DNA from: Antechinus flavipes
Lineage: Eukaryota
DNA length: 64,000 bases
Assembly (NCBI RefSeq): GCF_016432865.1
Contig: NC_067400.1
Coordinates: 623,286,001 to 623,350,000 of the forward strand
Direction: 5' to 3'
Each line of letters opens with the position of its first letter. The first letter of the stretch is position 1. The notes under the pieces were generated by a model, which saw only the letters and a program-made list of their open reading frames with translations, did not search any database and had not been told where the DNA came from. Both the position numbers and the translations under genes were made by a program. Below, piece after piece: positions 7,086 to 19,803 of this stretch.

Positions 7086-7319
7086 NNNNNNNNNNNNNNN
7101 NNNNNNNNNNNNNNNNNNNNNNNNNNNNNNNNNNNNNNNNNNNNNNNNNNNNNNNNNNNNNNNNNNNNNNNNNNNNNNNNNNNNNNNNNNNNNNNNNNNN
7201 NNNNNNNNNNNNNNNNNNNNNNNNNNNNNNNNNNNNNNNNNNNNNNNNNNNNNNNNNNNNNNNNNNNNNNNNNNNNNNNNNNNNNNNNNNNNNNNNNNNN
7301 NNNNNNNNNNNNNNNNNNN
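7086..7319. other. Assembly gap (234 N) within a GA microsatellite
   Basis: N run flanked by agaga...acagagacag. Confidence 0.99.
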
Positions 7320-9304
7320 ACAGAGACAGAGAAGAGAGACTGACAGAAAAAAAACTAAGAGGGGCCAGGGTACATTGCAACAGTTTTGCCGAGGGATAAA
7401 AACAGACTCTTTTGCTGATGGAAGGATGGAAGAGCTGGCTAGGGAAGGTGCAGGACCCCATCTCAATTTACAAATTGGGTCCCTGAGCACATCTGAGCGA
7501 GTTTAGCAGATCCTGGGTTTAAGGGAACTGTTTGCTCTGAAAGAGCTTAACATCTTCTCAGAACGCTCTCCCGGGCGCCAGTGCGCTACTTCTCGTTGCT
7601 GTAGCAGCAAGAGGACAGTGTGAAGCAGCTTTCCCCAGTGAGAGAGCGCTGAAGACCAAAAGACAAGGAATTTTTTAAAAAGGAGTTTTGCCCACTAGGT
7701 GACGTAGGGATGCTCCCCAAAGAGCGAAACCCAGGCCGGGAGGGCAGAGTGACGAGTTGCCCCGGTGCAAAGGCTCCTGCCAGCTTTCTGAGTGTGAAGG
7801 CTGTTCTTGCCCAAACTTTCTGTGTATTGCCTGGAAAACGCGACAAAGCTTTCTCTAGACAAAGGTGAACCATCGTAGTTCGAATACTCCTCCCCTCACC
7901 TTATCGCGATACCATATTCCTTTGTGCCTTCCCTTCTTATATATATTTCTGTTAATACATGAACGCAGAGACCTATTTCCCGTTTAAGAGTCGGCAGTGT
8001 CATCTGGAGCTGCTTTTGTATGAATGGGAAGCCCACGAATGGGGGCTCGAAGAAGTAAAAGCGAACCCCCCACGGCAGCCCCCCCCCACGGGGCAGTTAC
8101 CCGGGAACACCCTTCCCAGAAACCCCCGCTCTCCCCCAGAGGGGGCGGGGAGCCACTAGTGGAAGGGAGTGATGCGGCTGCCACAGGAGACATGTCCGGA
8201 CTAGAATCGGACAGACTCGGGCTGGCCCGAAGCCAAGGGAGAGCCGGCTTGGAGGGGGAAGGGGGGACGGCAGCAGGAGAGCCCCGAGGATCCGACTGAG
8301 GCAAGTTGACACCTGCCTCGGGATCCAGCCCCGGGGGATTTGTGCAGCCGTTTGGCCTGGGCCCCTGAAAGGAGAACTGGGTGGGGACCAGTCCTGGAGC
8401 GGGGCTGCTAAGGGACGTGAGCTCTCCTTGAGCTGTCAAAGGAAGGGGGAGGAGGTAGAGCGGGGCTGGAGCCAGTGGTGATTAAAAATGGGGGGAGGGA
8501 GGAGCCAAGGCAGGTTTAGAGCCGAAAGCAGGTCACCCCTGCTGCGGGACCACCCAAGCCCGAGCCCAGCCCCTGCTAGCAAGCAGAGTTGTTTGTCTAA
8601 CGAGCAGAGCCTTCCCCAAGAGCTGGAAAGGGCAGGAGCGGAGCTGATGGAGCTGGGGGCCACAGCGGGGGCAGCGTCCCGGCAGGAGGAAAAATCACCA
8701 AGGGTTTGCTGTCACTCTATGAGGCCCCTTGCGCCCCCATCTCCCCCCCTCCGGAATCGGTTTCCTTACGTGTACAATGAGACGGTTCCCAAGCTACCTT
8801 GTCCTTCTGGAACCCACAACCCCATAAATGCCCCTGCCCTGCTGCCCAACACCCGCCCCTCCTAGTGCCAGGGACTGAACTAGCCACGAGCTCGGCCCCG
8901 GCCTGGAGGACGCCTGCTTCCCTGGCCCGGTCTCCATCGCCCCTTAAAGGCTCAAGAACTAAAAGAACATTTCTAAGCCCCCTCTCAGAAGGGACTTTCT
9001 CTGGCTAAATTTCCCTGCCGGGTGGACATGTGAGAAGAGAAGACAGAAGGGAGACAATAGGAGGGGAAAGGAGTGGAGGCAGGGGAGGAGAGGAGGAAGA
9101 AAGGAGTGAAGGGAGGAGAGAAGAAGGGGAGAAGAAGAAAGGAGTGAAGGGAGGGAGGGAGGAGAGGAAAGAAGTGCAAGGAGGGGGGAGGAGACCCTCC
9201 TAGAAGTTGGGGGGATGATCAGACTTCCAGATCCAAAAGAGACTTTAAAAAATAAGTGCTTCGGGGGAAACCCAGGCCAGGATCGAGGCCTTGGCAAGGC
9301 GAAG

Positions 9305-9500
9305 CAGCCAATCGGAATGGTTGCTCAGACTTCCTGCTGCCTAGCCTGGGTCGCCACCACCAAGGGTGCAGGGGGTCCGTCCCTGAGAAGGAAAGGCTGG
9401 AAGGCGCCATCCTTCTCGGAAGGGGCTGCCACATCCGAGGAGGAAGTCGGTGATCATCCCAGAAGGAAGCTGGGTAACACTGGGCCCAGGAGATAAATGC
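9305..9500 (+). promoter_or_regulatory. Candidate megakaryocytic promoter of the GP6-like gene (CCAAT, Ets, GATA)
   Basis: gCCAATc at about 9308, acttcctg (Ets, reverse) at about 9330, AGGAAGT at 9441-9447 and AGATAA at 9491-9496, all 130-320 bp upstream of the ATG. Human GP6 is GATA/Ets driven. Confidence 0.45.
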
Positions 9501-9626
9501 TCCCCCCTGAGGCAGCCCAGAGGCAGACTCTCTGCCTCAGAACCTCACTTTGGTAAGTCTCCTCAGGGTGTGAGGAGACAAGGATCCATCCGCCTCCTGA
9601 CCCCCCTGGAGGCCCCGATCAGGACC

Positions 9627-9660
9627 ATGGGCTCCTCCCTCCCTCCCCTACTTTTATTTG
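9627..9660 (+). CDS. GP6: GP6-like exon 1 (leader, [11 protein letters not shown])
   Basis: gaccATGG start; 34 nt, the canonical LRC leader-1 size; donor gtgagt. Confidence 0.85.
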
Positions 9661-12600
9661 GTGAGTCCCAAGAAAGTGTGAGAGGGTCTCGCTGGAGAAG
9701 GGGATCTCCTGGGAGACAGAGTGGAAAACGGGTGGGGGGGGGGGGGCGAGCCTGACTGGGGAGGGGGCTGGAAGACCTGAGGCGGGGCAGGAAAGTGAGG
9801 GCACAGATCTAGTCCTGGCTGCCCAGTCCCAGCTGTGCCCTCCTGAACAAGTCATTGCCCTGCCCGGAACATCAGTTTCCCCCTCTGTGAAATAGGGGGT
9901 CAGACTCCATGATCTTAAGGTTCCTTCCAGCAAATATCTGGTGACTCTTGGAGGCCCAGAGAAACCCAGGATTCAGTCCCGGGGACATTTCTGCACCCCC
10001 GGGAGGGAAATGTTTGCCTCTCACCGGCTCTTCTCCTCTAGGCCTGGGTCTGAGCCTGGGGATCAAAGCACAAAGAGGTGAGTCTCCCCCCAGCAGACAG
10101 GCGTCCCAGAGCGGGTGCTGGGGAGGGGGAGCCGGGGAGACGGGCAGACGGGCCTGGAGCTCAGGACTCTAAATCTCTTCCAGAATTTCTCTCCAAACCC
10201 ATTCTCTGGGCAAAGCCTAGCTCCATGGTGGCCCAGGAGACGGACGTGATCCTGTGGTGCCAGGGCCCCCCTGGAGTTGACATGTACCGCCTGGAGCGAC
10301 TGGGCTCCTCCAGGGACTATAAGGACCAGCCTGGCCTTCCGGAGCCCGGAGCTCAGGCTCGGTTCCCCTTGGGGAGCGCATCCTCCAACATTGCTGGCAA
10401 GTACAGATGCTCCTACAGTACCGGGAGCCGCTGGTCACAGCCCAGCACCCAGCTGGAGCTGGTGGTGACAGGTGAGGGGAGACCCCGAGGAGACCAGCTA
10501 GCGCTGAAGCCTGGGAGCCAAGAAGGGGGAGCTGGGCTGGGGGAGCCCTGGCTCAGGGAGCAGGATCAGAGGTGGGGGAAGAAAGAGGGAGACTGAACCT
10601 TGGGGTGAGCTCCCCCGGAGGGGGTTCCCGTACAAATGCGCACAGCTCCCCGGAAGGGAGGGCGTACAAATGCGCACAGCTCCCCGGAGGGGAGGGCGTA
10701 CAAATGCGCACAGCTCCCTGGAGGGGGCTCCCTGTACAAATGCGCACAGGTCCCCGGAGGGAGGGGGACGTACAAATGCGCACAGCTCACCCGGAGCGGG
10801 GTCCCGTACAAATGCGCACAGCTCCCCGGAGGGGGGGTCCCTGTACAAATGCGCACAGCTCCCCGGAGGGGGGGTCCCTGTACAAATGCGCACAGGTCCC
10901 CGGAGGTGGGGGGCTCCCTGTACAAATGCGCACAGGTCCCCGGAGGTGGGGGGCTCCCTGTACAAATGCGCACAGGTCCCCGGAGGTGGGGGGGCTCCCT
11001 GTACAAATACGCACAGCTCCCCTGGAGGGGAGTCCCGTACAAATGCGCACAGCTCCCCCAGAGGGGAGGGCGTACAAAAGCGCACAGCTCCCCGGAGGTG
11101 GGGGGTCCCTGTACAAATGCGCACAGCTCCCCCGGAGGGGGGGCTCTCCTGGAACAGGGGGCTCCCTATAACATCCCATCTCCTTTTCCTCAGACTTGTA
11201 TGACAAACCCTTCCTCTCCATCCTGCCCAGCGCCGAGGTATCTTCCGGGGAAAGTGTCACGTTCTCCTGCAGCTCCAAACATGGCTTTAACACGTTTGTG
11301 TTGGCCAAGGAGGGCAGAGCGGGCATCTGGAAGACCCAGGAAGGGAAGTCCCCCGTCCACTTCTCCGTCCCTGCGGTGACCGCCGGCCACGGAGGCACCT
11401 ACAAGTGCTATGCATTTAACAGTCGGTTACCCTACCTGTGGACGGCCCCCAGTGAGCTGCTGGAGCTCCGGGTCAAAGGTGCGGGATGCCCAGCCAGCAT
11501 CCCCAGCCCTCTCCCGCCAGGCCTAGGACCCCTAGCTGCTCTCCAGGGCCCCCTCCTCCTCAGAGGTCGGAGGGCAGAAGGCCCATGCTTCCCAAGGGAA
11601 CCCGAGGCAGGGGACAGAGGCAGGGGTCCGAGAGGGAGCCCGGGGAGGATGAGTATCTCCGCCCAAGCTATCCCGCTCCCCCGACTCAGTCTCAGTGGCT
11701 CCTTGAGTTGAACTGATTGAAATGAGACTGAGCTAAGATGAGGGCAGAGACTCGGTGCTGTCCAGAAGTGGAGGGGGAGGGGGGAAGAGGGAGGAAGCGC
11801 CCTGGCTTTGGAACCTGGATCTCAATTCGGATCCTGTCGCTGAAAGTGGGGGCTGGGCTAGCTTCCACCAGCCTGTGCTCTCTGAGGGAGAAGGAAAGGA
11901 GGGGACAGGAGACAATAACAATACTTCCTCTATTCCCAGGACTCCCTCGAGCCCCTTCCCCAACAGAGTCAGATGCTCAGACTGGTGAGTAAGGCCGTCG
12001 CCGGGCTCCTGGGCAAAGGGTGCCCATGGCAGGCATGCATACCCGCAAAGGCTCCCCATGGTGGGATCTGTACCCACAAAGACTCCCCATGGCGGGCATC
12101 CGTACCTGTAAAAGCTCCCCATGGCGGGCATCCATACCTGCAAAGGCTCCCCATGGCGGGCATCCGTACCTGCAAAAGCTCCCCATGGTGGGATCTGTAC
12201 CCACAAAAGCTCCCCATGGCGGGCATCCATACCTGCAAAAGCTCCCCATGGCGGGCATCCATACCTGCAAAGGCTCCCCATGGCGGGCATCCGTACCTGC
12301 AAAAGCTCCTCATGGCGGGCATCCGTACCCACAAAGGCTCCCCATGGCGGGCATCCGTACCTGTAAAAGCTCCCCACAGTGGGCAGCCGCACCCCCAGCT
12401 CTCACTGGGGGCCCCACATTTTCTCGGCTGTCCTCCCTGGGGGCAGGGGTGGGGTTCAAGTAGCAGTGTGGCGGTGGGGAAAGAGCCCTGGCTTTGGAAC
12501 CAGTGCTAGGTCGGAACTGGGGCTCTGCCTCTCGCCAGCTGAGGGTTTACTGGCACCTCACTTAATTCTCTGGTGCATCTGTAAGATGGGGGCTGGGCTA

Positions 12601-14380
12601 GCTTCCACCAGCCTGTGCTCTCTGAGGGAGAAGGAAAGGAGGGGACAGGAGACAATAACTGTTACTTCCTCTTCCCAGGACCCCCTCGAGCCCCTTCCCC
12701 AACAGAGTCAGATGCTCGGGCTGGTGAGTAAGGCCGTCTCCGGGCTCCTGGGCAAAGGCTCCCCATGGCAGGCATGCATACCCGCAAAGGCTCCCCATGG
12801 CAGGCATGCATACCCGCAAAGGCTCCCCATGGTGGGATCTGTACCCACAAAGGCTCCCCATGGCGGGCATCCGTACCTGCAAAGGCTCCCCATGGCGGGC
12901 ATCCGTACCTGCAAAGGCTCCCCATGGCGGGCATCCGTACCTGCAAAGGCTCCCCATGGTGGGATCTGTACCCACAAAAGCTCCCCATGGCGGGCATCCA
13001 TACCTGCAAAAGCTCCCCATGGCGGGCATCCGTACCTGCAAAGGCTCCCCATGGCGGGCATCCGTACCTGCAAAGGCTCCCCATGGCGGGCATCCGTACC
13101 CGCAAAGGCTCCCCATGGCGGGCATCCGTACCCGCAAAGGCTCCCCACGGCGGGCATCCGCACCCCCAGCTCTCACTGGGGGCCCCACATTTTCTCGGCT
13201 GTCCTCCCTGGGGGCAGGGGTGGGGTTCAAGTAGCAGTGTGGCGGTGGGGAAAGAGCCCTGGCTTTGGAACCAGTGCTAGGTCGGAACTGGGGCTCTGCC
13301 TCTCGCCAGCTGAGGGTTTACTGGCACCTCACTTAATTCTCTGGTGCATCTGTAAGATGGGGGCTGGGCTAGCTTCCACCAGCCTGTGGTCTCTGAGGGA
13401 GAAGGAAAGGAGGGGACATGGACAATAACTGTTACTTCCTCTATTCCCAGGACCCCCTCAAGCCCCTTCCCCAACAGAGTCAGATGCTCGGGCTGGTGAG
13501 TAAGGCCGTCTCCGGGCTCCTGGGCAAAGGCTCCCCATGGTGGGCATCCGCACCCCCAGCTCCCACTGGGGGCCCCACATTTTCTGGGCTGTTTCCCTGG
13601 GGCAGGGGCGGGGTTCAGGGCTGGGACATCCCCAGGGAGAAGGACTGGAGAAGGGGCTGGCGGTCCCTGAGAAGCCCCCTGAGGCACGGCTGTCACGACA
13701 GGGTGTCCAGCTTGGCAGCCTTCCTCTGTCCAGGCTAATAAATAAGGGGCTTGGAGTCCGTGACCTCTAAGAGCCCCCCAAACGGAACCCCTGGTTCCCT
13801 CTGCTAGAGACAAGAACGAAGGAGAGTGCCTGCGGGTAGAAGAGGGCTTGGGGCGGACACAGGGGTCGCCTTTCTCTCCATTCTCTTCTCCCCGTTTCCA
13901 GGCACTCTCACGTCCCCCCACGTTCCCACAGAGAAGGAGAACATCCCAGCAGGTGAGCCGCCAGACCTCCCAGCTCCGGGAGGGGGCAGGGAGGGACCGC
14001 CACATTTCCCTGGCCTTGCCTCCCTTCTGAGTCAGGGCCCCCCTATTCCCCCACCTCCCCACCCCCCATGCCCAGGGCCCTGGCAGGAGCAGTCTTAGGG
14101 GCTGAGGCTGGTTTCCAGGGCAGCCCCCCCTCCCCCCCAGAGATCCCACCTGAGGAGAGCCCCCAGTGGGGAGGCGGCCCGGGGCCCTCTGCCCCCAGCT
14201 CATAACGGCCTTATCTCGGCAGGTCGCAGCCCCCAGGATTACACGGCGTCCAACCTCGTGCGCTTGGGCCTGGCCGCGCTGGTGGTGACGGCACTGGGGG
14301 GGCTGCTGGCCTGGCGGGGGGGATCCCGCAGGCTTTCGGGCCGCTTTTCCAGGCCCCAGACCCAGCAGCCCCACAGGTGA
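9627..14380 (+). CDS. GP6: Platelet glycoprotein VI-like activating Ig receptor (leader, 2 Ig domains, mucin stalk, Arg-containing TM, short tail), 328 aa
   Basis: Exons 9627-9660, 10042-10077, 10184-10471, 11194-11478, 11940-11984, 12679-12723, 13451-13495, 13902-13952, 14223-14380. All are GT-AG and phase 1, totalling 987 nt with no internal stop. D1 [18 protein letters not shown] vs human [18 protein letters not shown]; D2 [26 protein letters not shown] vs [35 protein letters not shown] vs NLVRICL. Confidence 0.87.
10042..10077 (+). CDS. GP6: GP6-like exon 2 (leader mini-exon, [12 protein letters not shown])
   Basis: 36-nt exon, ctctag/gtgagt; typical LRC leader-2. Confidence 0.88.
10184..10471 (+). 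CDS. GP6: GP6-like exon 3 (Ig domain D1)
   Basis: 288 nt, [12 protein letters not shown]...C...YRC...QLELVVT, ttccag/gtgagg. Confidence 0.93.
10610..11145. repeat. GC-rich minisatellite (VNTR), 14 units of 34-41 bp, in GP6 intron 3
   Basis: Invariant core gtacaaatgcgcacag(c/g)tcccc followed by variable G-runs. 14 cores counted from 10631 to 11112. Confidence 0.95.
11194..11478 (+). CDS. GP6: GP6-like exon 4 (Ig domain D2)
   Basis: 285 nt, [12 protein letters not shown]...C...YKC...LLELRVK, cctcag/gtgcgg. Confidence 0.93.
11940..11984 (+). CDS. GP6: GP6-like stalk exon 5a ([15 protein letters not shown])
   Basis: 45 nt, phase 1-1, ttcccag/gtgagt. Confidence 0.8.
12015..12385. repeat. 31-32 bp minisatellite, about 12 units (duplication unit 1)
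   Basis: ggctccccatggcgggcatccgtacctgcaaa and the variant ccccatggtgggatctgtacccacaaa. Confidence 0.95.
12679..12723 (+). CDS. GP6: GP6-like stalk exon 5b ([15 protein letters not shown])
   Basis: 45 nt, phase 1-1, ttcccag/gtgagt. Confidence 0.8.
12755..13160. repeat. 31-32 bp minisatellite, about 13 units (duplication unit 2)
   Basis: Same unit as 12015-12385. Only one copy follows exon 5c (about 13530). Confidence 0.95.
13451..13495 (+). CDS. GP6: GP6-like stalk exon 5c ([15 protein letters not shown])
   Basis: 45 nt, phase 1-1, ttcccag/gtgagt; differs from 5b by one nucleotide. Confidence 0.8.
13902..13952 (+). CDS. GP6: GP6-like stalk exon 6 ([17 protein letters not shown])
   Basis: 51 nt, long pyrimidine tract plus ttccag, donor gtgagc, phase 1-1. 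Confidence 0.8.
14223..14380 (+). CDS. GP6: GP6-like TM/cytoplasmic exon
   Basis: [59 protein letters not shown] is the signature of FcR-gamma-coupled LRC receptors. Confidence 0.9.
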
Positions 14381-14487
14381 AGGGGCTGCCTCCAAGCCAT
14401 CCCAGATCCTGCAGCTGATCCGGAGACTGGTCTGGGGGGGGGGGGCAGGGCGCAAGCAGCCGGGGGTCTCAGCTGTAGTCTCAGCTT

Positions 14488-14493
14488 CATAAA
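14488..14493 (+). terminator. Possible variant poly(A) signal (CATAAA) for the GP6-like gene
   Basis: About 110 nt after the stop and followed by GU-rich gtctggcgtgtgttg. No AATAAA nearby. Confidence 0.3.
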
Positions 14494-15764
14494 GTCTGGC
14501 GTGTGTTGCTGAGCCCCTTCGTGCGTCCGTCCGTTGGCGTCTGGGTCGGAGGCCTCCTCAGAGACGGGCTGGGTCGGCTGTCACTCCAAACAGGAGCACA
14601 GAGCCGGTGCTCAGGGGGCCTCCACTTAACCCTCTGCTGCCGACACCAATGCGCGCCCGTTTTATAGGCGGGAGGAGATTACCCCGATAATGGGCACGTT
14701 GCAGGGCTGGGCTCCTGTCTGCTCCATCCCTGAGAATCCCCCCTGGCCCAGGCAGCCTCCCCCGCTCCAGCCTCTTCCTCCCAGGTCCACCCCCAGAAGC
14801 CAGCTCTGCCAAGGCCCCGCTGCCCCCTTTCACCGTCTGGTCTGGCAGCCCTGACCTTGCCCGGGATCCTGGGCCGGGAGCCCTTCCTGCTTCCCTTCCT
14901 CTGCCCTCCCCCAGCCAGCACCCCGAGGAGGAGAACGGGACTGATGAGCCACCCCATTAACTTTAAGGCTGCAATGGCAGCCATGCTGCCCAGGCAGGAG
15001 GGAGAGGCTCAAGTGCGACGAGAAGGCCGCCCGGGAGGTGACCTGGAGGACCCTGGGACCCCGCCCGGAGGACCCTGGGACCCCCAGCACCAAGCGGGGC
15101 TCGGGTCGTTCAGGTCCCTGGGCAGAATCCCGCTGCCAGCCAGGCCCTGGGCACCAGATGTGCCTCCGGGCACCGTGGGAGGCTGTCCCTGCTGCTCGGC
15201 TCCTTGACATGGGGTTGGGTAAGCCCCTCTCTCGGGGGCTCCAGGAAAGGGCAGCAGCCCGGCCCTCAGGTCCCAGGATCCTCCGGGGCTTGCTTCTTGG
15301 CCAGATAAAGGAGGACCTGAAGTTTCTTTGGCTAAACTCTGAGGCCAGTCTCTGACCGACTGTCCTGGGGTCCAACCCCGGGCCTGCCTCCCTCTGGTGT
15401 TCCTGGGGGGGGGGGGTCCGGGACCGGCGGCCTCCAGCCCAACGTTCCCTCTCATGCCCGTGAATGAGCGCCATCTCCCCCACGGCCCCCACGGCCCCAC
15501 AGCCCCCCAGCTCCCCAGACACAGAAAGGGAGAGCCAGGACCGAACAAAAGGAGGGAAGGCTCGACAGCGTTCTGAGCTGGGGAGGCCTCCCTTTGTGAA
15601 GGAGGACACTGAGCTTGGGAACAGGGGGAGTGAGCTGGCTGGGGATCCAGAGGCCGGGTGAGGGGCAGAGCTCGGAGCACCTCTCCAGCTGGGGAGGGCA
15701 GGCAGGGCTGGACCCTGGTGCCTCTCCTTCACTGGGGTTCCCGGGAGGGCAGGCAGGGCTGGAA

Positions 15765-16115
15765 CTCAGAGTAGCCCCTCGGGGCGGGGAGGGAGCCCCG
15801 GGGAGGAGGATGGTGATGGGAGCAGGAGCGATCTGGGGGCGCCCTGCGCCTCCCATTCTCTGGGGTTCTCAGGAGGGCAGATACTCAGAGTAGCCCCTCA
15901 GGGCGGGGAGGGACCCCCGGGGAGGAGGAGGGATGGGAGGGGGGGATCTGGGGGCGCCCTGCGCCTCCCATTCTCTGGGGTTCTCAGGAGGGCAGATACT
16001 CAGAGTAGCCCCTCAGGGCGGGGAGGGACCCCCGGGGAGGAGGAGGGTGAGGGGAGCGGAGGGATCTGGGGGCGCCCTGCGCCTCTCATTCTCTGGGGCT
16101 CCCGGGAGGGCGGGC
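15765..16115. repeat. Tandem repeat, 3 x 115-119 bp, G-rich
   Basis: ctcagagtagcccctc...gatctgggggcgccctgcgcctcccattctctgggg starting at 15765, 15884 and 15999. Confidence 0.9.
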
Positions 16116-16800: not shown

Positions 16801-17374
16801 GTGAGGAGGAGTCGGACCCAAGGGGCCCAGCCCCAGCAGAGTGGAGCTGGCCAGGACTGAGGACCCTCCCGGGGCCCAAGGATCCCCCTAAAGGGTAAGG
16901 GGGACGGTGGGGTGGGTGGACCCAGCCCCCGGGCAAAGAAGCCACGTGGGCGGCCGGGGGGGGGGGTGGAGGTGGGGGGAGAGACGGGCCACCGCGGAGG
17001 GCCAGGCTCACACCGGGCTGGGCTCCCCACCCCCCAGCCCTCTCCTGGAACTGGAGAACCAGTCCAGCGGGATCCAGGTGGGTGTGATTTCCGCCTGGGA
17101 GGGCCCGTGATGTTTGTAGGGGGAGGGGTAACCCAGGGACACGTGGAGGTGAGCCAGCTGGAGGAAGTAGGGAAGCTGGCCGCGCTCGGAGGGGGGTGGG
17201 GAGGGGGGCAGAGCCGGGCTCTCCGGGGACCGCTCGCTTCTCCCCCGGGAGGGGAGCCCGGAGGACTCTGGGTAGCCTGGCCCGTTGAGGGGCCGGTCGG
17301 GAACAGCAGGGAAAGCCGCTTCTCCGCCCCATCCCGAGCTCCCCGGGCTAACCCGAGCCCTCCTCTCCTCGCAG

Positions 17375-17875
17375 ATGCCCATCCTGAAACAGCTGGGCCC
17401 GGCCGTGCCCAAAAAGCGCCTGGATCGAGATGCCATCTCGGCCCCCCTGGGGGACTTTCGGCACACCATGCATGTGGGGCGCGGGGGCGATGCCTTTGGG
17501 GACACGTCCTTCCTGAGTCGCCACGGCGGCGGAGGCGGGGGTCCCGGCCCCTCCCCGGCCCCGTCCCCGGGCCCGTCCCCGGCTCCCTCGGCCGCCCCAT
17601 CCCCCGCGCGCCCTGCCCTGCCACCCCCCACGGTTCCCCAGCCCCCGCGGCCTTCGGAGGGCCAGGCCGAGTCCCGGGCGGCCGCGGGAGACCCGTTTCT
17701 GTCCTTTCACCTGGATCTGGGGCCTTCCCTCCTAGAGGAGGTGCTGGGAGTGATGGATCGAGGGGGGGCCCTAGCGGATGCAGGCGCTGCCTCGAGTGCC
17801 CCCAACGGGGGGCTGCTGCCCTCCCAGCGGGGCTTCGGCTCCGAGGAGGACCTGGATGAAGTTATCGGGCTGTAG
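17375..17875 (+). CDS. CDC42EP5: CDC42 effector protein 5 (Borg3), 166 aa
   Basis: MPILKQLGPAVPKK...ISAPLGDFRHTMHVGRGGDAFGDTSFLSRHG (CRIB), FHLDLGPSLLEEVLGVMD (BH3), ending DEVIGL*. The acceptor cag abuts the ATG. Confidence 0.97.
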   Translation: MPILKQLGPAVPKKRLDRDAISAPLGDFRHTMHVGRGGDAFGDTSFLSRHGGGGGGPGPSPAPSPGPSPAPSAAPSPARPALPPPTVPQPPRPSEGQAESRAAAGDPFLSFHLDLGPSLLEEVLGVMDRGGALADAGAASSAPNGGLLPSQRGFGSEEDLDEVIGL

Positions 17876-18035: not shown

Positions 18036-18312
18036 TAGCATTTATTTCGGCTGCTTTGGCGTCGGTGTTTCTGCGGGCTCCTGGGGCGTTAGGGAGAGTG
18101 TCTGCGGGCTCCTGGGGCGGTAGGGTGGGAGTGTCTGCGGGCTCCTGGGACAAGGGTGCTCGTGCTGGAAGAGCAACTGGGATTCTTTGGGCCTCAGTTT
18201 CTCTTTCAGGTCCTTTCCAGGCCCGTGGCCACACTAACGGTCTCTGGTGCTCCCATGGGGAGGGCTTTGGGACACGCCCTTCTTGGAGCCACACCTCCGC
18301 CCTTTCGGGGGC

Positions 18313-19803
18313 ATGACCGATAACCCCACCCCCACCCCGGCGGAGAAGGGGAACCAGCCGGGCTGGGCCGCTCCGCTGCGCGGGCCCCTTAAGAGCCTCA
18401 CCCCTGGCACACGGACTCCGAAGGGGCGTGACCGGCGAGGCCGGAAGAGCCGGGGACACCTGGGTCCCGGGAGCCAGCCCTTGGCCCTGGGCGGCGGCGG
18501 CGGCGGCGGCGGCATGGAGGAAGGGGGAGGTCCGGAGCCCGTCTGCCGCTTCTACCTGGAGGGGCGCTGCCATTTCGGGGCCCGCTGCCGGCTCCCCCAC
18601 CCCGGCGCCGAAGGCCGGGCTCGGGCTGAGCCTCTGCCGGGGCCGGCCTCGAGCCCCGAGGGCAAGAAGCCCTCCATGAAGACGGCCCAGGCGGTGATCG
18701 ACCGCATCCGCTGGGACCCTCACCTGGAGCCCGCCGACTTCTCCGTGGGCTACCTGGACCGCTTCCGCGGCGTGCAGGAAGAGCCCTTCACCGCCTTCTG
18801 CTGGGACGAGGACCTGGCTGCGCTGGGCCCCGGGGTGCTGGCCGTGCCCCAGCACCGCATCCGCTACTTCCGACACCGCGGCCGCCTCGTGTGGGACCGC
18901 GCCTCCCGCACCGACCTCGTCTTCGGCTCGGCCGCGGGCCGCGGGACCACCATCCTGGACGGGCTCGCCACGGCCGGCGGGCCCGGAGCCGGAGAAGAGG
19001 GCGGGCCCGGGACGGAGCCCGAAGGCCGGGGAGAGGAGGGCGGGCCCGGAACGGAGGCCGGAGCTGGGGAAGAGGATGGCAAACCAGGGACTGAGGCCAA
19101 AGGCCGGAGCGAGGGCAGGCCCGGAGCCCCGGAAGAGGACCGCGGACCAGAGAGGGAGCCCAAAGGCCGGGGAGAGGAGGGCGGGCCCGGGACGAGCGGC
19201 CGCTCCGACAGCGGGAGAGGGGCCGCCGAGGGCCTCCGCCCCACACATTTCGTAGCCCTCCCGATAACGGACCCGCAGCTGCGGGCAGCAGTAGTCGGGG
19301 CCCAGGCCGGCCTGGCCGGGGCCGTGAGCCCCGGAGCCCTGCACCTGACCTTGGTCTTGCTGCGCCTCGCAGGCCCCGGGGAGGTGGCCGCGGCCGCGGG
19401 GGCCCTGAGACAACTGGTCCGGGGCCCCGGCTTCCACTGTCCCAGAGCACTCCATTTCCAGAACCTGGCGTGCCTGGACCACAGACTCATCTATTCCCTC
19501 CCAAGCCCGGGCCTCGAGGGCTTAGCCCAGGCCCTGGCCCGGGGCCTCGAGGCCGAGGGGCTTCAGGTCCTGGAAGCCGCAGGCCGGGAGCTCGGCCCCC
19601 ACCTCACTCTGGCCAAACTGCCTCGGGGGAGCCCCGGGCGCTTGTCGCTACCCGAGGCCCCGGGGGACGCCGAGCTGGGCAGCCAATCGGTGGAAGAGCT
19701 CCAGCTATGCTCCGTGGGAGGGGCGCAGGGACCCGAGGCGGGGTCCTCTGTATTAGCCCAGGTGCCCCTGGTGCCCTCCACCCTGCCAGGGGCTCTCCAC
19801 TAG
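18313..19803 (+). CDS. LENG9: LENG9: CCCH zinc finger, MJ1316/DUF504 domain, AKAP7-like 2H phosphoesterase (single exon)
   Basis: CRFYLEGRCHFGARCRLPH; VIDRIRWDPHLEPADFSVGYLDRF...VPQHRIRYF...VWDRASRTD; RPTHFVAL, LHLTL, PHLTL. In-frame ATGs at 18313 (496 aa) and 18514 (strong Kozak, 429 aa); the real start is uncertain. Confidence 0.95.
   Translation: MTDNPTPTPAEKGNQPGWAAPLRGPLKSLTPGTRTPKGRDRRGRKSRGHLGPGSQPLALGGGGGGGGMEEGGGPEPVCRFYLEGRCHFGARCRLPHPGAEGRARAEPLPGPASSPEGKKPSMKTAQAVIDRIRWDPHLEPADFSVGYLDRFRGVQEEPFTAFCWDEDLAALGPGVLAVPQHRIRYFRHRGRLVWDRASRTDLVFGSAAGRGTTILDGLATAGGPGAGEEGGPGTEPEGRGEEGGPGTEAGAGEEDGKPGTEAKGRSEGRPGAPEEDRGPEREPKGRGEEGGPGTSGRSDSGRGAAEGLRPTHFVALPITDPQLRAAVVGAQAGLAGAVSPGALHLTLVLLRLAGPGEVAAAAGALRQLVRGPGFHCPRALHFQNLACLDHRLIYSLPSPGLEGLAQALARGLEAEGLQVLEAAGRELGPHLTLAKLPRGSPGRLSLPEAPGDAELGSQSVEELQLCSVGGAQGPEAGSSVLAQVPLVPSTLPGALH

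What the first reader, a model, noticed from the sequence alone, without database searches (positions are those of the whole stretch)
11800..13600. Stalk length set by exon copy number: a 45-nt mucin exon triplicated in ~750-bp units
Seen: three near-identical symmetric (phase 1-1) 45-nt exons (11940, 12679, 13451) with intact ttcccag/gtgagt sites encode G(L/P)P(R/Q)APSPTESDA(Q/R)(T/A). Copies 2 and 3 differ by one base and their flanking introns are almost identical, so the duplication is recent. Any subset can be spliced in frame. Established: stalk-length polymorphism of a platelet receptor is known for GP1BA (39-bp intra-exonic VNTR), but I know of no such system for GP6. Inference: this may be a modular system where unequal crossover, aided by the embedded minisatellites, and exon skipping tune how far the collagen-binding domains project from the membrane.
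Basis: partly seen in the sequence, partly recalled or inferred. Interest (0 to 1): 0.8.

Follow-up and report, generated by a model that had tools for sequence, protein, structure and literature searches.

The report
Triplicated stalk exon in GPVI-like gene
A marsupial (yellow-footed antechinus) receptor gene related to the platelet collagen receptor GPVI carries three tandem copies of a 45-base exon, each adding 15 residues to the stalk between the binding domains and the membrane; this is real, shared with other dasyurids and already in RefSeq gene models, but nobody has shown that it tunes function.

Summary
The window is Antechinus flavipes. The gene 'platelet glycoprotein VI-like' (+ strand, 9627-14380) has three 45-nt phase 1-1 exons at 11940, 12679 and 13451. 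All three have intact cccag/gtgagt splice sites. They sit in 739/772-bp tandem units with 32-bp intronic minisatellites.

It is not new to the databases. RefSeq already models all seven in-frame combinations (X1-X7). The Tasmanian devil also has three copies, in two assemblies. Sminthopsis has two and koala has one. I found no paper that describes it.

Copies group by species rather than by position. Antechinus units are 96-99% alike, against about 90% between Antechinus and devil. The youngest Antechinus duplication begins and ends in the 32-mer, and the second array has exactly one extra 32-mer. That fits unequal crossover.

Still not shown:
- copy-number polymorphism within the species;
- real use of each isoform (I saw only two low-depth spliced contigs, from a devil-like species);
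- platelet expression;
- 1:1 orthology with GP6 (the tree is unresolved, and the neighbours are CDC42EP5/LENG9, not those of human GP6);
- any functional tuning.

The closest analogue is the human IgG3 hinge, a 17-aa exon plus three repeated 15-aa exons.

Verdict: a real, modestly interesting new member of a known kind. The scan has not reported this on other DNA.

The parts
9627..9660 (+). exon 1 (start codon, first part of the signal peptide)
   Evidence: The ATG is followed by gtgagt. The product matches RefSeq isoform X1.
10042..10077 (+). exon 2 (36 nt, end of the signal peptide)
10184..10471 (+). exon 3, Ig domain D1
   Evidence: PDB hits to GPVI, LILR and NCR1 D1.
10608..11151 (.). 36-38 bp minisatellite in intron 3 (14.7 copies)
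   Evidence: It sits at the same place in devil and Sminthopsis.
11194..11478 (+). exon 4, Ig domain D2
11795..12470 (+). tandem unit 1: shortened upstream flank, exon A, array 1, post-array segment
11940..11984 (+). stalk exon copy A (45 nt, phase 1-1; [15 protein letters not shown])
   Evidence: An exact short-read contig of the same species covers 11949-12080.
12013..12388 (.). 32-bp minisatellite array 1 (about 11 units)
12471..13252 (+). tandem unit 2: full upstream flank with a MIR-like stretch, exon B, array 2, post-array segment
12679..12723 (+). stalk exon copy B ([15 protein letters not shown])
   Evidence: An exact contig covers 12588-12717.
12752..13165 (.). 32-bp minisatellite array 2 (13 units; array 1 plus one extra unit at its 5' end)
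13253..13617 (+). tandem unit 3 (partial): upstream flank, exon C, one 32-mer, diverged post segment
13451..13495 (+). stalk exon copy C ([15 protein letters not shown])
   Evidence: An exact contig covers 13359-13490.
13902..13952 (+). 51-nt stalk exon ([17 protein letters not shown]), single copy
14223..14380 (+). last exon: juxtamembrane stretch, transmembrane helix with Arg ([12 protein letters not shown]), short basic tail, stop codon

Best explanation
This is a tandem array of a 45-nt, phase 1-1 cassette exon. The gene encodes a two-Ig receptor of dasyurid marsupials. The receptor is probably FcR-gamma-coupled, because it has a transmembrane Arg. Its closest eutherian relatives are GPVI.

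Each copy encodes a 15-residue Pro/Ser/Thr-rich module of the membrane-proximal stalk. Each included copy therefore lengthens the stalk by 15 residues without touching the Ig domains or the anchor.

The exon is single in koala. It was duplicated with about 0.3-0.4 kb of flanking intron in the dasyurid lineage. The array has since been reshaped by unequal crossover and gene conversion. That explains three things:
- copy number differs (Sminthopsis 2, devil 3, Antechinus 3);
- copies resemble each other within a species more than across species;
- the third Antechinus copy is about 99% identical to the second.

The last Antechinus step is best explained by crossover between the lone 32-mer after the second exon and the expanded 32-mer array after the first.

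Shown: the anatomy, the species comparison, the duplication edges and the existence of RefSeq models for all seven combinations. Inferred: that all copies are used in vivo, that the stalk is O-glycosylated and extended, and that length matters for function.
For: Anatomy and frame.

Species and annotation: searches identify Antechinus flavipes XP_051845639-45. These are X1 ABC, X2 AB, X3 AC, X4 BC, X5 A, X6 B and X7 C.

Other species:
- Devil has three copies at L001/L002 7896, 8214 and 8637, in two assemblies. Sminthopsis has two at L003 8601 and 8987. Koala has one at L004 5289, with no repeats.
- Protein models of possum, wallaby, bilby and opossum show one copy.
- All 8 dasyurid copies keep the 45-nt length, the open frame and both splice sites.

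Concerted pattern:
- Every Antechinus copy has ..PTESDA.. and every devil and Sminthopsis copy has ..PTKSD...
- In the tree the Sminthopsis pair groups at 97/98, devil B+C at 73/86, and the Antechinus copies group together.
- The Antechinus inter-exon segments are 98.3% identical, against 90% to devil.

Crossover edges: [exon A..exon B] aligns colinearly with [exon B..exon C]. There are 4 mismatches in the first 61 nt. Then array 2 equals array 1 plus one extra 32-mer at its 5' end. Then 229 identical nt follow. Homology ends at the single 32-mer after exon C.

Not an obvious artefact:
- The assembly was made from about 100x PacBio reads with contig N50 51.8 Mb (PMC9290055).
- Copy-specific sequence of A, B and C occurs as exact short-read contigs in run X6 of the same species.

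Splicing in a relative: GT..AG joints D2->45-nt exon and 45-nt exon->51-nt exon in run X5, a devil-like species.

Stalk composition: 44% Ser/Thr/Pro over 72 residues.
Against: - I could not see A. flavipes RNA. The RefSeq isoforms are computed models. Because B and C are identical over their last 35 nt and first 9 nt, short reads can create false A->C or B->51-nt junctions.
- The two spliced joints I saw have depth 2, come from another species, and cannot be assigned to a copy.
- Run X6 may be the very individual that was assembled, and no short-read contig spans two units. The tandem order therefore rests on the PacBio assembly alone.
- Exon and flanking intron diverge equally fast (12% against 10%), and 11 of 14 variable exon sites are at codon positions 1 or 2. 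Outside the invariant core SPT(E/K)SD there is little sign of purifying selection on the peptide.
- Positional orthology against independent gains cannot be resolved with about 200 nt per copy.
Confidence: 0.7

Rival explanations
1. Neutral by-product. The exon array is real, but extra copies are merely tolerated because the stalk is disordered. The many isoforms would then be splicing noise on short (45-nt) exons, or the annotation pipeline's enumeration of a splice graph. There would be no tuning of receptor reach.
For: - Exon divergence is no lower than that of flanking intron, and changes are mostly non-synonymous.
- Models in single-copy species also skip the exon: wallaby X5 and sugar glider X2.
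- No functional data were found in the papers searched.
Against: - All 8 dasyurid copies keep exact length, frame and both splice sites, while their introns gained and lost tens to hundreds of bases.
- The core SPT(E/K)SD is invariant in all copies.
- The array has been kept in three genera that split more than 11 Ma ago. The dating rests on the Antechinus-Murexia split of 11 Ma (PMC9290055).
Confidence: 0.4
2. Only some copies are genuine exons. One or two of the three would be silent pseudo-exons. In that case the seven RefSeq isoforms arise from ambiguous mapping of short reads to near-identical copies.
For: - B and C share their last 35 nt, their first 9 nt and identical donor regions, so junction reads with short overhangs cannot be placed.
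- I have no independent A. flavipes transcript evidence.
Against: - Acceptors and donors are equally good in all three copies.
- Three pipelines model devil products with 2 and 3 copies: RefSeq, a GenBank submitter annotation and Ensembl/UniProt.
- Junctions D2->B/C and A->51-nt exon can be told apart at the 4th and 7th base. The single-copy isoforms X5-X7 need such reads. This rests on my inference about how the pipeline builds variants.
Confidence: 0.15
3. Assembly artefact. B and C would be two haplotypes of one exon unit wrongly placed in tandem, so the true array has two units.
For: - B and C differ by only about 1%, and the species is reported as highly heterozygous (PMC9290055).
- Short-read contigs cannot show the order of the units.
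Against: - The contig was built from about 100x PacBio reads, which are far longer than the 2.3-kb array.
- There is no gap nearby; the nearest N run is 7086-7319.
- B is followed by 13 32-mers and then a post segment of the unit-1 type. C is followed by one 32-mer and the diverged terminal segment. The two units therefore have different right-hand contexts.
- Devil independently has three copies in two assemblies.
Confidence: 0.05
4. Wrong gene identity. The gene would be a marsupial-specific LRC activating receptor of leukocytes rather than the platelet collagen receptor. The stalk array would then have nothing to do with platelets or collagen.
For: - The tree leaves eutherian GPVI, this marsupial clade and other marsupial 'GPVI-like' genes unresolved.
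- Devil has a second gene named platelet glycoprotein VI (P0197).
- The neighbours are CDC42EP5 and LENG9.
- The tail has no Pro-rich motif.
Against: - Among non-marsupial cluster representatives, the ones most identical to this protein (49-53%) are all named platelet glycoprotein VI.
- Among two-domain PDB chains, D1 scores best against GPVI.
- A published phylogeny calls a devil LRC gene the GPVI orthologue and states that GPVI is the only group A member shared by marsupials and eutherians (PMC6557307).
Confidence: 0.3

Closest known systems
Human IGHG3 (IgG3) hinge exons
   Same: A flexible linker is encoded by one 17-residue exon plus three tandemly repeated 15-residue (45-nt) exons. Natural alleles have 1, 2 or 3 core repeats, and linker length changes function (PMC7058349). 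Here there are three repeated 15-residue exons plus one 17-residue exon, and copy number differs between species.
   Different: - The IgG3 hinge is Cys/Pro-rich and disulfide-bonded, not mucin-like.
- Its exons are constitutively included, and variation is allelic.
- Here allelic variation is not shown, and alternative inclusion is modelled.
- The gene family and cell context are different.
PTPRC (CD45) alternative exons 4-6 (A, B, C)
   Same: Three consecutive cassette exons encode Ser/Thr-rich, O-glycosylated segments of an extracellular region. They are used in combinations: RA, RB, RBC, RABC, RO (PMC8380896). This is the same logic as the seven modelled combinations here.
   Different: - CD45 exons are larger and are not near-identical recent duplicates.
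- Their choice is known to be regulated by cell type.
- No regulation is known here, and no zero-copy form is modelled.
GP1BA macroglycopeptide VNTR
   Same: It is a platelet receptor whose mucin-like stalk varies by 1-4 repeats of a 13-residue unit (Lopez 1992, cited in PMC6322330).
   Different: The GP1BA repeats lie inside one exon and vary only as alleles. Here each unit is its own exon with introns of 694 and 727 nt, so splicing can also vary the number.
Tandem exon duplications with mutually exclusive splicing
   Same: Both originate by tandem duplication of an exon with its flanks (PMC9013439).
   Different: Those clusters include exactly one copy. Here the phase is 1-1, the introns are long, and models with 1, 2 and 3 copies exist. 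The copies are additive rather than substitutive.
Eutherian GPVI (GP6)
   Same: It has two Ig domains, an O-glycosylated mucin-like stalk and an FcR-gamma-type transmembrane Arg (PMC6557307). It is also the closest eutherian relative by identity.
   Different: - No repeated stalk exon is described for eutherian GP6.
- Eutherian D1 is 9 residues shorter.
- The Antechinus tail is short and lacks a Pro-rich motif.
- The genomic neighbours differ.

Membership tests
GPVI (GP6) orthologue | Two C2-type Ig domains of the LRC A1/A2 types | tested here: met
   Pfam Ig_2/ig/Ig_3. PDB hits to GPVI, LILR and NCR1 with both exons.
GPVI (GP6) orthologue | Ser/Thr/Pro-rich stalk between D2 and the membrane | tested here: met
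   72 residues, 44% S+T+P. Glycosylation itself cannot be tested here.
GPVI (GP6) orthologue | Transmembrane Arg of the FcR-gamma-associating subtype | tested here: met
   [12 protein letters not shown] in the last exon. The motif type is described in PMC6557307. Association itself was not tested.
GPVI (GP6) orthologue | Cytoplasmic basic (calmodulin) region plus Pro-rich SH3-binding motif (feature recalled from established knowledge of human GPVI) | tested here: not met
   The tail is [22 protein letters not shown]. It is basic but has no PxxP.
GPVI (GP6) orthologue | Groups with eutherian GPVI to the exclusion of paralogues | tested here: inconclusive
   A clade of eutherian GPVI plus all marsupial GPVI-like genes has 94/94 support, but its inner order is open. 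The highest non-marsupial identities (49-53%) are to GPVI.
GPVI (GP6) orthologue | Conserved gene neighbourhood | tested here: not met
   The downstream neighbours are a BORG_CEP/PBD protein (CDC42EP5-like) and an MJ1316/AKAP7/CCCH protein (LENG9-like). Devil and Sminthopsis have the same neighbours. From memory, human GP6 lies beside RDH13 and NLRP2.
GPVI (GP6) orthologue | Platelet/megakaryocyte expression and collagen binding | not testable with these tools
   No usable A. flavipes RNA run was offered.
Length-setting tandem cassette exons (IgG3-hinge type) | Two or more adjacent homologous exons, each with its own splice sites | tested here: met
Length-setting tandem cassette exons (IgG3-hinge type) | Symmetric phase, so that any number of copies stays in frame | tested here: met
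   45 nt, phase 1-1. All seven combinations give open products.
Length-setting tandem cassette exons (IgG3-hinge type) | Copy number varies between alleles or species | tested here: inconclusive
   Between species it is met: 1, 2, 3 and 3 copies. Between individuals nothing could be told, because short-read contigs do not span units.
Length-setting tandem cassette exons (IgG3-hinge type) | Products with different copy numbers exist | tested here: inconclusive
   Only computed models are available: 7 in Antechinus and 4 in devil. Two low-depth spliced contigs come from a relative.
Intra-exonic coding VNTR (GP1BA type) | Repeat units contiguous within one exon | tested here: not met
   The units are separated by introns of 694 and 727 nt.
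Mutually exclusive exon cluster | Exactly one copy per transcript, enforced by frame, intron size or RNA structure | tested here: not met
   Phase 1-1 and long introns. Models with 2 and 3 copies exist.

The most novel reading that the evidence does not exclude
The array would be a living length dial. Copy number would be polymorphic in dasyurid populations through recurrent minisatellite-mediated unequal crossover. Regulated skipping would give a 15-residue ladder of stalk lengths. Together these would change how far a collagen-type activating receptor projects, or how easily it is shed. Independent gains of the third copy in the devil and Antechinus lineages would then indicate selection for a longer stalk.
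Probability: 0.12. Interest if true: 0.65.

Novelty: new member of a known kind. Interest (0 to 1): 0.38.

Why it matters
If the copies are really used in different numbers, this would be a natural, genetically simple series of one receptor with 1x, 2x and 3x stalk modules. That is the kind of series built by hand to ask how the height of a receptor above the membrane affects ligand capture, clustering and shedding.

It is also a clean small example of two things. One is concerted evolution of coding exons. The other is an intronic minisatellite acting as the substrate for exon gain. The medical or general impact is limited. The gene is a marsupial 'GPVI-like' gene of unproven orthology, and the principle is already known from the IgG3 hinge, CD45 and GPIb-alpha.

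Tried and rejected
1. Transcript evidence. The RNA runs laid (X1, X5) proved to be a devil-like species: 90-95% alike, Lys codon at 13477, and upstream sequence identical to the devil units. Their odd 'joints' (11906->13420, and going back by 1162 and 391) are devil units split across Antechinus units. They are not deletion alleles.

2. Copy number in another Antechinus species (X10, 3.8% diverged). Its contigs stop at 12012 and resume at 13524, so no count is possible.

3. DNA for bilby, possum, opossum and Gracilinanus loci was not retrievable. Single copy in those species rests on protein models only.

4. Positional orthology of copies. The tree of 207 columns has only one strongly supported node.

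5. A fuzzy-regex search timed out and was replaced by blastn.

6. Other readings of the region were checked and dropped:
- The long ORFs on both strands across the arrays have no Pfam hit.
- There is no Rfam family in 9000-16000.
- The ORFs are a by-product of G+C-rich repeats.

7. PDB totals first seemed to favour LILR/PirB. That is because multi-domain chains sum several stretches, so I compared two-domain chains only.

8. N runs were left untouched.

Full report
**What is there.** Reading 11500-14000 shows three 45-nt segments, at 11940-11984 (A), 12679-12723 (B) and 13451-13495 (C). Each is preceded by a pyrimidine tract ending (t)tcccag and followed by gtgagtaagg. A 56-nt pattern of acceptor, exon and donor matches three times with at most 3 mismatches; none is expected in 100 shuffles. 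The repeat finder gives start-to-start spacings of 739 and 772 bp. Tandem Repeats Finder gives 32-bp minisatellites of 11.1 and 13 copies in the introns after A and B. C is followed by a single 32-mer. B and C differ by one base. A differs from B by three.

**The gene.** I joined nine exons with canonical splice sites:
- 9627-9660
- 10042-10077
- 10184-10471
- 11194-11478
- the three 45-nt exons
- 13902-13952
- 14223-14380

This gives a 328-residue protein with a signal peptide, two Ig domains (Pfam; PDB hits) and a 72-residue stalk that is 44% Ser/Thr/Pro. It also has a transmembrane helix carrying Arg ([12 protein letters not shown]) and a 22-residue basic tail. The three exons are phase 1-1 and encode G(L/P)P(R/Q)APSPTESDA(Q/R)(T/A).

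**It is already annotated.** A protein search and cluster look-up identify the window as Antechinus flavipes. My 328-aa product is XP_051845639.1, 'platelet glycoprotein VI-like isoform X1'. RefSeq holds exactly the seven non-empty subsets of the three exons:

| Isoform | Copies |
|---|---|
| X1 | ABC |
| X2 | AB |
| X3 | AC |
| X4 | BC |
| X5 | A |
| X6 | B |
| X7 | C |

These are computed models and I could not inspect their support. B and C share their first 9 and last 35 bases, so some junctions (A->C, B->51-nt exon) could be mapping ambiguities. D2->B/C and A->51-nt exon are distinguishable within a few bases.

**Other species.** The Tasmanian devil has three copies (L001/L002 at 7896, 8214 and 8637, spacing 318 and 423 bp) in two independent assemblies. 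Sminthopsis crassicaudata has two (L003 at 8601 and 8987). Koala has one (L004 at 5289), with no repeats in that intron. Protein models of possum, wallaby, bilby and opossum show one copy. Wallaby X5 and sugar glider X2 skip it. Devil products with A'B'C', A'B', A'C' and B'C' come from RefSeq, a GenBank submitter annotation and Ensembl/UniProt. All eight dasyurid copies keep 45 nt, an open frame and both splice sites. So the array is a dasyurid feature and not an Antechinus novelty.

**History.** Copies resemble each other within species:
- All Antechinus copies read PTESDA. All devil and Sminthopsis copies read PTKSD.
- A tree of exon plus flanks groups the Sminthopsis pair (97/98), devil B'+C' (73/86) and the Antechinus copies. 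It does not group copies by position.
- The Antechinus inter-exon segments are 98.3% identical to each other, but only 90% to the devil counterpart.
- Devil A' is as far from devil B' (19 differences in 175 nt) as from any Antechinus copy. At least two copies therefore predate the devil/Antechinus split, which is older than the 11 Ma Antechinus-Murexia split (PMC9290055).
- The flank variant with a 77-nt deletion of a MIR-like stretch occurs before A only in Antechinus, but before A' and B' in devil. This suggests the third copies arose separately, or that the array was rebuilt.

**The last step in Antechinus.** The last step can be read directly. [Exon A..exon B] aligns colinearly with [exon B..exon C]:
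- There are 4 mismatches in the first 61 nt.
- From the first 32-mer onwards, array 2 equals array 1 plus one extra 32-mer at its 5' end.
- 229 identical bases follow, then about 99% identity through exon B/C and its donor region.
- Homology ends at the lone 32-mer after exon C. Beyond that, the sequence is only 89.7% like the other units.

This is the expected product of unequal crossover between a lone 32-mer behind the second exon and the array behind the first. In devil the 32-mer is present only once or twice per unit, so the expansion of the arrays is specific to the Antechinus line.

**Artefact?** Several points argue against one:
- The assembly came from about 100x PacBio reads, with contig N50 51.8 Mb (PMC9290055).
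- There is no gap near the array.
- B and C have different right-hand contexts.
- In run X6 (same species, 99% or more alike), exact contigs carry A-specific (11949-12080), B-specific (12588-12717) and C-specific (13359-13490) sequence.

X6 may be the assembled animal, and no contig spans two units, so this is not independent proof of order. I put the artefact at about 5%.

**Transcripts.** No A. flavipes RNA run was offered. Runs X1 and X5 are a devil-like species. Their differences rebuild the devil's unit sequences, and their non-splice 'joints' are devil units split across Antechinus units. X5 has two GT..AG joints, 11478|12679 and 13495|13902, at depth 2 each. The gene is therefore spliced through a 45-nt exon in a relative, but the copy cannot be named.

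**Is it GP6?**

For:
- The non-marsupial representatives most identical to the protein (49-53%) are all named platelet glycoprotein VI.
- D1 scores best against GPVI among two-domain PDB chains.
- A published LRC phylogeny calls a devil gene the GPVI orthologue (PMC6557307).

Against or open:
- My tree supports a clade of eutherian GPVI plus several marsupial 'GPVI-like' lineages (94/94), but not its inner order.
- Devil has a second gene named GPVI (P0197).
- The tail lacks a Pro-rich motif.
- The neighbours are CDC42EP5-like and LENG9-like genes.

'GPVI-like' is the defensible name.

**Selection.** Exon and flanks diverge equally (12% against 10%), and most variable exon sites are at codon positions 1 or 2. 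Only the core SPT(E/K)SD and the length are conserved. This fits a spacer whose length and composition matter more than its sequence. It equally fits a tolerated duplication.

**Comparison with known systems.** The nearest analogue is the human IgG3 hinge. It has one 17-residue exon plus three repeated 15-residue exons, natural alleles with 1-3 repeats, and length-dependent function (PMC7058349). CD45 exons A, B and C give combinatorial O-glycosylated segments (PMC8380896). GPIb-alpha varies by an intra-exonic 13-residue VNTR. Most described tandem exon duplications are mutually exclusive (PMC9013439), whereas these are additive. I found no paper on a repeated stalk exon in GPVI or on GPVI stalk length.

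**Verdict.** This is a real feature, correctly described, and already present in gene models of two species. It is undescribed in the literature I could search. It is a new member of a known kind, and its functional reading is untested.

Noticed in passing
window 10608-11151; L001 7011-7121; L003 7005-7840: A 36-39 bp G+C-rich minisatellite sits in the intron between the two Ig exons in all three dasyurids, with 14.7, 2.9 and 22 copies. It shares the motif CCGTAC..GCTCCCC..GG.GGG with the 32-mer of the stalk introns, so the two may be related.
   Followed up: partly
window 12013-12388 vs 12784-13159: In the colinear alignment of the two 32-mer arrays, all 14 transitions have A/T in array 1 and G/C in array 2. 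This could be CpG decay of array 1, or homogenisation or GC-biased conversion of array 2.
   Followed up: no
window 14290-14310: The Antechinus last exon lacks 15 nt (residues EAWLA) that are present at the membrane/cytoplasm boundary in devil and Sminthopsis, and in similar form in other marsupials.
   Followed up: partly
window 12520-12590 and 13300-13360: The upstream flank of exons B and C contains a MIR-like stretch (..cacttaattctctggtgcatctgtaagatggggg..). About 77 nt of it are deleted before exon A, and also before devil A' and B'.
   Followed up: partly
proteins P0197, P0166, P0159, P0167, P0127, P0165: Marsupials carry several further genes named 'platelet glycoprotein VI(-like)', including a second one in devil. 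They are about 40-45% identical to this one, and the automatic naming hides an unresolved gene family.
   Followed up: partly
window 11943 and 11951 (run X10): In a related Antechinus species (about 3.8% diverged), the first copy reads C and A at these places. That gives GPPRT.., closer to the devil and Sminthopsis first copies, so the first copy differs between Antechinus species.
   Followed up: no
window 15764-16000: A 115-bp tandem repeat (2 copies, 93% match) lies downstream of the gene, between it and the CDC42EP5-like gene.
   Followed up: no
window 17285-17875 and 18247-19803: The downstream neighbours are a Cdc42 effector (BORG_CEP + PBD) and an MJ1316/AKAP7/CCCH protein (LENG9-like). 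The order is the same in devil and Sminthopsis.
   Followed up: yes
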